A DNA stretch of 64,000 nt from Bispira polyomma (lineage: Eukaryota), in assembly GCA_965649765.1 (NCBI GenBank), contig OZ287758.1, forward strand, positions 34,410,001 through 34,474,000, in the 5' to 3' direction. The stretch's first letter is position 1; the number at the start of each line of letters is the position of its first letter. The position numbers were made by a program, and so were the translations under genes. Positions 19,514 to 19,691 of the stretch are shown one piece after another. Under the pieces are notes generated by a model. The model saw only the letters and a program-made list of their open reading frames with translations, searched no databases and was not told the DNA's origin.

Positions 19514-19668
19514 TTTCAGAAAAATATTCCAAAAATGAACAAAAATATAACTTCCAAACTTAAATTCACTTTATTTTTTAAATATCCAAATCTCAATATC
19601 AACCTGGAGGAACTTCCTTCGTGATCAAGGTGTCCTCTGTGCCAGGCCAAGAGACTACTTTGTAATTG

Positions 19669-19691
19669 TAGCCAAAAGGCCGAGAAGAGAT
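19669..19691 (-). ncRNA. RNU2: U2 snRNA 5' fragment (nt 1-23)
   Basis: ATCTCTTCTCGGCCTTTTGGCTA at the spacer position equivalent to 13204. Confidence 0.9.

What the first reader, a model, noticed from the sequence alone, without database searches (positions are those of the whole stretch)
19642..19691. Two divergent families share a 'disarmed U2' leader replacing U2 nt 24-48
Seen: after U2 nt 1-23, B (19642-19668) and C (26484-26510) continue C(A/G)ATTACAAAGTAGTCTCTTGGCCTGG, 26/27 identical to each other although their ORFs and remaining UTRs differ. It aligns without gaps to U2 nt 24-48 (AGATCAAAGTGTAGTATCTGTTCTT), with the branch-site pairing GTAGTA changed to GTAGTC. It can refold as GGCC-TTTT-GGCTAC-loop-GTAGTC-TCTT-GGCC, competing with U2 stem-loop I. 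Inference: an ancient captured target/TSD now travels with the element, and 5' integration occurs by cDNA pairing with U2 nt 1-23, as in R2 elements that carry upstream 28S sequence. The changes could stop the chimeric RNA acting as a poisoned U2 and/or destroy the target so the occupied site is not re-cut. Near identity implies strong selection or leader exchange between families.
Basis: partly seen in the sequence, partly recalled or inferred. Interest (0 to 1): 0.8.

Follow-up and report, generated by a model that had tools for sequence, protein, structure and literature searches.

The report
One-off swapped snRNA head on retrotransposon
Two unrelated jumping genes in U2 snRNA genes share a short leader here only because one dead copy borrowed the other family's decayed U2-derived front end (its own front end comes from U1 snRNA), so this is a local graft on a known kind of target-carrying retrotransposon, not a selected 'disarmed U2'.

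Summary
The 27-mer is real (26/27 identical; 15/25 in register with U2, p=0.0003) and never occurs in intact U2 genes. It is family C's own U2-derived head: all three C copies carry it, in two spacer haplotypes. It is not family B's. Window B is a dead, rearranged copy that took C's head through a shared CCTGG pentamer; 26/27 matches the copies' 2-4% divergence. Heads copied with the RNA and fixed by cDNA-target annealing are known from R2; U1/U2 heads are known from crocodilian Tx1-Mar/SINEU. The hairpin is the predicted fold but borderline (p 0.02-0.07) and may follow from a duplicated U2 stem-loop. Disarming is unnecessary: the chimeras lack the Sm site and other families keep intact U2 1-47/51. 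In passing: close relatives in another animal insert at one site in U1 snRNA genes, a target I did not find reported for non-LTR elements. The scan had noted this array before (s1-697641), not these junctions.

The parts
19669..19691 (-). Native U2 snRNA nt 1-23 of unit B (one change at nt 4), behind a standard-type array spacer
19642..19668 (-). 27-nt family-C head grafted onto this B copy; decayed U2 24-~38 plus either decayed U2 39-48 or a decayed duplicate of U2's 5' stem-loop
19642..19646 (-). CCTGG microhomology shared by the end of the C head and U1 nt 8-12; the graft point
19599..19646 (-). U1 snRNA nt 8-55 (94-96% identical to the genome's U1 genes): family B's own 5' head
18257..19513 (-). 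Element B ORF1 (418 aa, weak CCHC knuckle)
14379..18008 (-). Element B ORF2 (APE, RT, zf-RVT; broken into pieces) and start of the 3' UTR; about 490 nt of the family's 3' end are missing in this copy
14220..14370 (-). U2 nt 36 to end, downstream of B
26511..26533 (-). Native U2 nt 1-23 of unit C (spacer haplotype shared with L001)
26484..26510 (-). Family C head, present in all three C copies
20871..26483 (-). Element C body: UTR, ORF1 from 26413, broken ORF2 with a 78-nt duplication, A-rich 3' end at the Keno site
20773..20870 (-). U2 nt 36 to ~133 downstream of C (the rest of the gene is deleted)
13157..13204 (-). Canonical U2 nt 1-48 ahead of element A (comparison junction, intact branch-pairing sequence)
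9076..13156 (-). Element A, 3'-truncated in the RT domain

Best explanation
These are Tx1-clade, Keno-type LINEs inserted at one site of U2 snRNA genes (shown). They probably have no promoter of their own and are transcribed from the host U2 promoter, so the RNA starts at U2 +1 (inferred). The cDNA end can anneal to the target's U2 5' part and overwrite what lies downstream, or be end-joined after U2 nt 47-51, leaving a duplicated head (inferred from junctions; D and A' show the duplicate). Sequence past the annealing zone is copied with the element and decays, giving each family its own degenerate head; the 27-mer is family C's (shown for 3 copies). Family B's head is a recently captured U1 piece (shown). 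The window's B copy is a one-off chimera in which C's head was joined to the U1 piece at CCTGG (shown as a pattern). Route inferred: deletion of a C body from a direct C-B tandem (~40%), RT template switch between B and C RNAs (~30%), gene conversion (~20%).
For: The leader has 4 hits in 1.035 Gb, all followed by element sequence. Only 3 C copies exist and all carry it, in two spacer haplotypes. B at C11:29788732 has canonical U2 40-51, then U1 from nt 5; the same joint is in run X2. Unit F has canonical U2 1-51 fused to a U1 piece. D has U2 1-47 then a second stem-loop I copy, 11/12 identical; A' has U2 1-50 then a decayed copy. Window copies are dead and rearranged. Families in two other samples have their own heads joined at U2 nt 25-40. 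R2 precedent: PMC3774820.
Against: Only two independent C contexts, and recombination between array units could also give that pattern. No RNA data, so transcription from U2 +1 is not shown. No listed contig bridges the window's leader-U1 joint (tables cut short). The head of the B copy most like the window's (C11:29502808) could not be read.
Confidence: 0.78

Rival explanations
1. The leader is an ancestral module kept nearly identical in B and C by selection to disarm the chimeric RNA.
For: 26/27 identity across families with 36% ORF1 identity; stable alternative hairpin; C and D heads resemble each other (shuffle p=0.003).
Against: Other B copies lack it. The identity equals neutral copy divergence. 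No Sm site in either chimeric 5' UTR. A, A', D and F carry intact U2 1-47/51. L004's two changes cost 4.5 kcal/mol of the fold.
Confidence: 0.05
2. C's head is C's alone, but its changes were selected: they destroy the endonuclease target (so the promoter is not stolen by a later insertion) or build a fold that hides U2's 5' end.
For: Direct tandems exist where a U2 junction was re-targeted (F then B; L066, L072). C's fold beats fixed-U2 nulls at p 0.02-0.05. One subfamily in a related animal keeps a 10-bp helix onto U2 1-10 unbroken in three diverged heads.
Against: Across 10 families pairing onto U2 1-10 is not general (Fisher p=0.10). A plain stem-loop duplication gives the same fold (-15.9 kcal/mol; p=0.07 under that null). 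The one two-sided change fits CpG decay. Several families persist with intact targets.
Confidence: 0.2
3. The leader is a frozen junction of one old C insertion, spread only by DNA duplication and unequal crossing-over, and never copied through RNA.
For: Window C and L001 are a segmental duplicate (97.9% over 3 kb including flank); few copies.
Against: L004 and window B sit in standard-type spacers without C's private variants. D and A' show heads inserted behind native U2. Family G has the same head at three loci with differing flanks.
Confidence: 0.12
4. The leader is part of a variant U2 gene that both elements inserted into, or an assembly mosaic.
For: The window is an orphon of the main array, and no listed contig bridges the joint.
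Against: No uninterrupted variant gene exists. 3' flanks are canonical U2. Window B's head has private changes found in no C copy.
Confidence: 0.03

Closest known systems
Keno (Tx1 clade, U2 snRNA-specific; Kojima and Fujiwara 2004 as cited in PMC4640811, PMC6136364)
   Same: APE-RT two-ORF element; 3' flank begins at the same U2 sequence.
   Different: Several co-resident families in one array; family-specific degenerate U2 heads and a U1 head, which I did not find described for Keno in the papers available (the 2004 paper was not held).
R2 elements with 28S-derived 5' extensions (earwig, sow bug, horseshoe crab, silkmoth; PMC3774820)
   Same: Altered target sequence fixed at the 5' junction, propagated by cDNA-target heteroduplex; tandem duplication when annealing fails; unconstrained decay of the extension.
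   Different: R2 has a restriction-like endonuclease and makes its 5' end with an HDV-like ribozyme; here the 5' end would be the snRNA transcription start and no ribozyme was found.
Crocodilian Tx1-Mar and SINEU with U1/U2 heads (PMC4494074)
   Same: Keno-related Tx1 elements with U1- or U2-derived heads, added repeatedly, sometimes at short homologies.
   Different: Those insert into a Mariner transposon; these still sit in U2 genes, so a U2-U1-LINE chimera forms behind a U2 promoter.
Utopia (PMC4640811)
   Same: Same U2 site; several families per array; variable 5' junctions.
   Different: Restriction-like endonuclease, single ORF.

Membership tests
Keno (Tx1 clade) | ORF1 with zinc knuckle plus ORF2 with AP endonuclease and RT | tested here: met
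   Pfam zf-CCHC (above cut-off in C, weak in A and B), Exo_endo_phos, RVT_1, zf-RVT
Keno (Tx1 clade) | Insertion at the U2 site whose 3' flank starts TCTGTTCTTATCAG | tested here: met
   16 A-tail/U2 junctions, all on C11 in or beside the U2 arrays; site as
Keno (Tx1 clade) | Monophyly with reference Keno elements | not tested
   No named Keno sequence came from the tools; the tree holds unnamed relatives only
R2-like target-derived travelling head | Same altered target sequence at every full-length 5' junction of the family (family C) | tested here: met
   3/3 C copies, two spacer haplotypes; small sample
R2-like target-derived travelling head | Same altered U2 sequence at every 5' junction (family B) | tested here: not met
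   Canonical U2 junction at C11:29788732; no leader at C11:29502808
R2-like target-derived travelling head | Tandem duplication of the head when annealing fails | tested here: met
   D and A'; not seen for C itself
R2-like target-derived travelling head | Template RNA includes upstream target sequence | not testable with these tools
   No RNA run holds the stretch
R2-like target-derived travelling head | HDV-like 5' ribozyme | tested here: inconclusive
   No Rfam ribozyme hit; no dedicated descriptor search
U1/U2-headed Tx1 (Tx1-Mar/SINEU type) | snRNA-derived 5' head shared by family copies | tested here: met
   U1 piece in all three B copies, from nt 5, 8 and 38
U1/U2-headed Tx1 (Tx1-Mar/SINEU type) | Target is Mariner-N4-like transposon | tested here: not met
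   B's genuine 3' junctions are in U2
Utopia | Restriction-like endonuclease | tested here: not met
   AP endonuclease at the ORF2 N-terminus

The most novel reading that the evidence does not exclude
Keno-type LINEs treat snRNA 5' ends as exchangeable modules: heads are captured from U2 or U1, swapped between families at microhomologies, and selected to erase the target or hide the snRNA 5' end; head capture helps lineages move between U2 and U1 genes, as the U1-site relatives suggest.
Probability: 0.2. Interest if true: 0.65.

Novelty: new variant of a known kind. Interest (0 to 1): 0.36.

Why it matters
As stated (a selected, shared disarmed U2) the finding does not hold. What remains is a compact natural series of 5' junctions that extends the R2 annealing model to an AP-endonuclease LINE driven by an snRNA promoter, and a family with a U1 head inside U2 genes. 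The by-product may matter more: sister elements at a fixed site in U1 genes with endonucleases about 50% identical to U2-site ones would give matched pairs for studying how sequence-specific AP endonucleases change target.

Tried and rejected
Kojima and Fujiwara 2004 was not held. C ORF1 found no homologues; P0005 and P0006 came without DNA. No U1-site 3' junction was found in this genome, and B's ORF2 is sister to A, not to the U1-site families, so 'B is a U1-targeting family' was rejected. General fold-back onto U2 1-10 was rejected as a rule (p=0.10). An HDV-like ribozyme in the heads was considered by eye and dropped: no P4 or catalytic segment. I could not choose between three alignments of the leader's right half; the duplicate alignments were picked after a scan, so their likelihood ratios (14 to 7000) are inflated. 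The large protein search was not used.

Full report
Setting. The window is G000:C11:34410001-34474000 of a 1.035-Gb animal genome; the organism was not identified. On the minus strand lie three U2 snRNA units, each interrupted by a two-ORF LINE: C, B and A. ORF1 has a CCHC knuckle and ORF2 has AP endonuclease, RT and zf-RVT domains. All three copies are broken or truncated. The main U2 array is at C11:29.49-29.85 Mb with about 190 U2 5' ends. Sixteen element 3' ends sit at one U2 site, the site reported for Keno and Utopia (PMC4640811; PMC6136364). The elements are Keno-type; kinship with named Keno was not tested.

The 27-mers are 26/27 identical and follow U2 nt 1-23. In register with U2 24-48 they match 15/25 (C, shuffle p=0.0003) and 14/25 (B). 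B and C share only 36% of ORF1 residues and 67% of ORF2 bases. The leader has four hits in the genome, each followed by element sequence, so it is not a variant U2 gene.

The leader belongs to C. A search with C's 5' 613 nt finds three copies, all with the leader. Window C and L001 are a segmental duplicate and share private spacer variants; L004 and window B do not carry those variants. So the head appears in at least two contexts, which fits travel with the RNA but does not prove it.

It does not belong to B. The 48 nt after the leader's 22nd base match the genome's U1 genes at 94-96%, and the coordinates give U1 nt 8-55 (Rfam agrees weakly). The last five leader bases, CCTGG, are also U1 nt 8-12. 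A second full-length B copy, 97% identical, has canonical U2 nt 40-51 followed by U1 from nt 5, and its 3' end is a genuine U2 junction. The same U2-U1 joint is in run X2. A third B copy matches only from U1 nt 38 and has no leader. Window B has also lost about 490 nt at its 3' end, and the locus shows other deletions. I read window B as one chimera joined at CCTGG. The route is inferred: deletion of a C body from a direct C-B tandem, template switching, or gene conversion. Direct tandems do occur: F precedes the second B copy with only U2 36-51 between them.

How the heads most likely work. Other families show the two outcomes predicted if the RNA starts at U2 +1. E replaces U2 from nt 20 on; D keeps U2 1-47 and then starts again with a second copy of stem-loop I, joined at TTCT; A' keeps U2 1-50 and adds a decayed copy; F keeps U2 1-51 and adds a U1 piece. 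In two other samples, relatives join at U2 nt 25, 29, 33, 34, 39 or 40, each with its own head, and family G repeats its head at three loci. This matches R2 elements whose RNA keeps 28S sequence: uniform altered junctions, tandem duplicates when annealing fails, and unconstrained decay of the extension (PMC3774820); annealing needs as little as 11 bp (PMC11331408). U1- and U2-derived heads on Keno-related Tx1 elements are known from crocodilians (PMC4494074). Transcription from the U2 promoter is inferred; no RNA run holds the stretch.

The fold and the functional claims. Against nulls that keep native U2 fixed it is borderline (p 0.02-0.06). The leader's right half matches U2 11-22 at 8/12 with four transitions, against 7/12 with four transversions in register, and a plain duplicate of that hairpin gives the same fold. 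I put duplication slightly ahead (~55%), given D and A'; the alignment was chosen after a scan. L004's two changes weaken the fold by 4.5 kcal/mol. Pairing back onto U2 1-10 is clear in two subfamilies of a related animal but not general (Fisher p=0.10 over ten families). A poisoned U2 is unlikely in any case: the Sm site at U2 nt 100-109 is absent from the chimeric 5' ends, and snRNP assembly needs it (established knowledge). A, A', D and F keep the branch-pairing sequence. Protection from re-cutting remains possible and untested.

Outside the finding. In ENA ERZ22147071, two related families sit in U1 genes of a U1/5S array: four 3' junctions at U1 nt 35-37, and 5' junctions after U1 nt 63 and nt 27 behind an intact U1 upstream region. 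Their endonuclease domains are 50-54% identical to those of A and B, and U1-site and U2-site rows are interleaved in the tree. Kojima and Jurka 2015 list only Keno and Utopia (U2) and the DNA transposons Dada-U1 and Dada-U6 as snRNA-targeting; my paper searches found no U1-specific non-LTR element, but Repbase was not checked. No U1-site junction was found in this genome and B groups with A, so B's U1 head is a capture whose source is unknown.

Verdict. Observation confirmed; interpretation partly supported. The shared leader is a one-off graft; the travelling head is an R2-like variant in a Keno-type element. Interest 0.36.

Noticed in passing
L068:1511, 4335, 9046; L070:535, 6509, 11999; L067:9947: Close relatives of these elements sit at one fixed site (nt 35-37) in U1 snRNA genes of a U1/5S rRNA array in another animal, in two families. 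I found no report of U1-specific non-LTR retrotransposons. Deserves its own follow-up.
   Followed up: partly
L073:1-28: A more distant relative from a third sample also begins right after a U1 5' piece.
   Followed up: no
window 19599-19646; G000:C11:29783601-29783677: U1 5' piece heads family B and also unit F, whose body differs from B; F may have inserted into a B junction and duplicated part of its head.
   Followed up: partly
L066:3807-3900, L069:6542-6635, L072:15164-15257: Three diverged heads keep a 10-bp helix between the UTR and U2 nt 1-10 with no broken pair; family G shows a similar fold-back that looks like an inverted copy of U2 1-29 skipping the hairpin.
   Followed up: partly
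G000:C11:29.708-29.782 Mb: Five copies (family J) with ORF2 DNA 90% like A but a different 5' part; three have open frames of about 1170 aa. Their heads were not read.
   Followed up: no
L004:1475-2652: 1.2-kb internally deleted C derivative with the C head and a 3' end largely unlike window C, inserted at the U2 site; possible non-autonomous element.
   Followed up: partly
L066:9892-9935, L072:1659, 20840: A family in the related animal recurs directly after another element's 3' end with no spacer or promoter between.
   Followed up: no
window 30628-35043 (+): ORFs whose translations look like a decayed RT/RNase H plus tyrosine-recombinase (DIRS-like) element; judged by eye only.
   Followed up: no
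window 5889-6538 and 7009-7320: Tandem repeats with 142-143 nt and 53 nt units.
   Followed up: no
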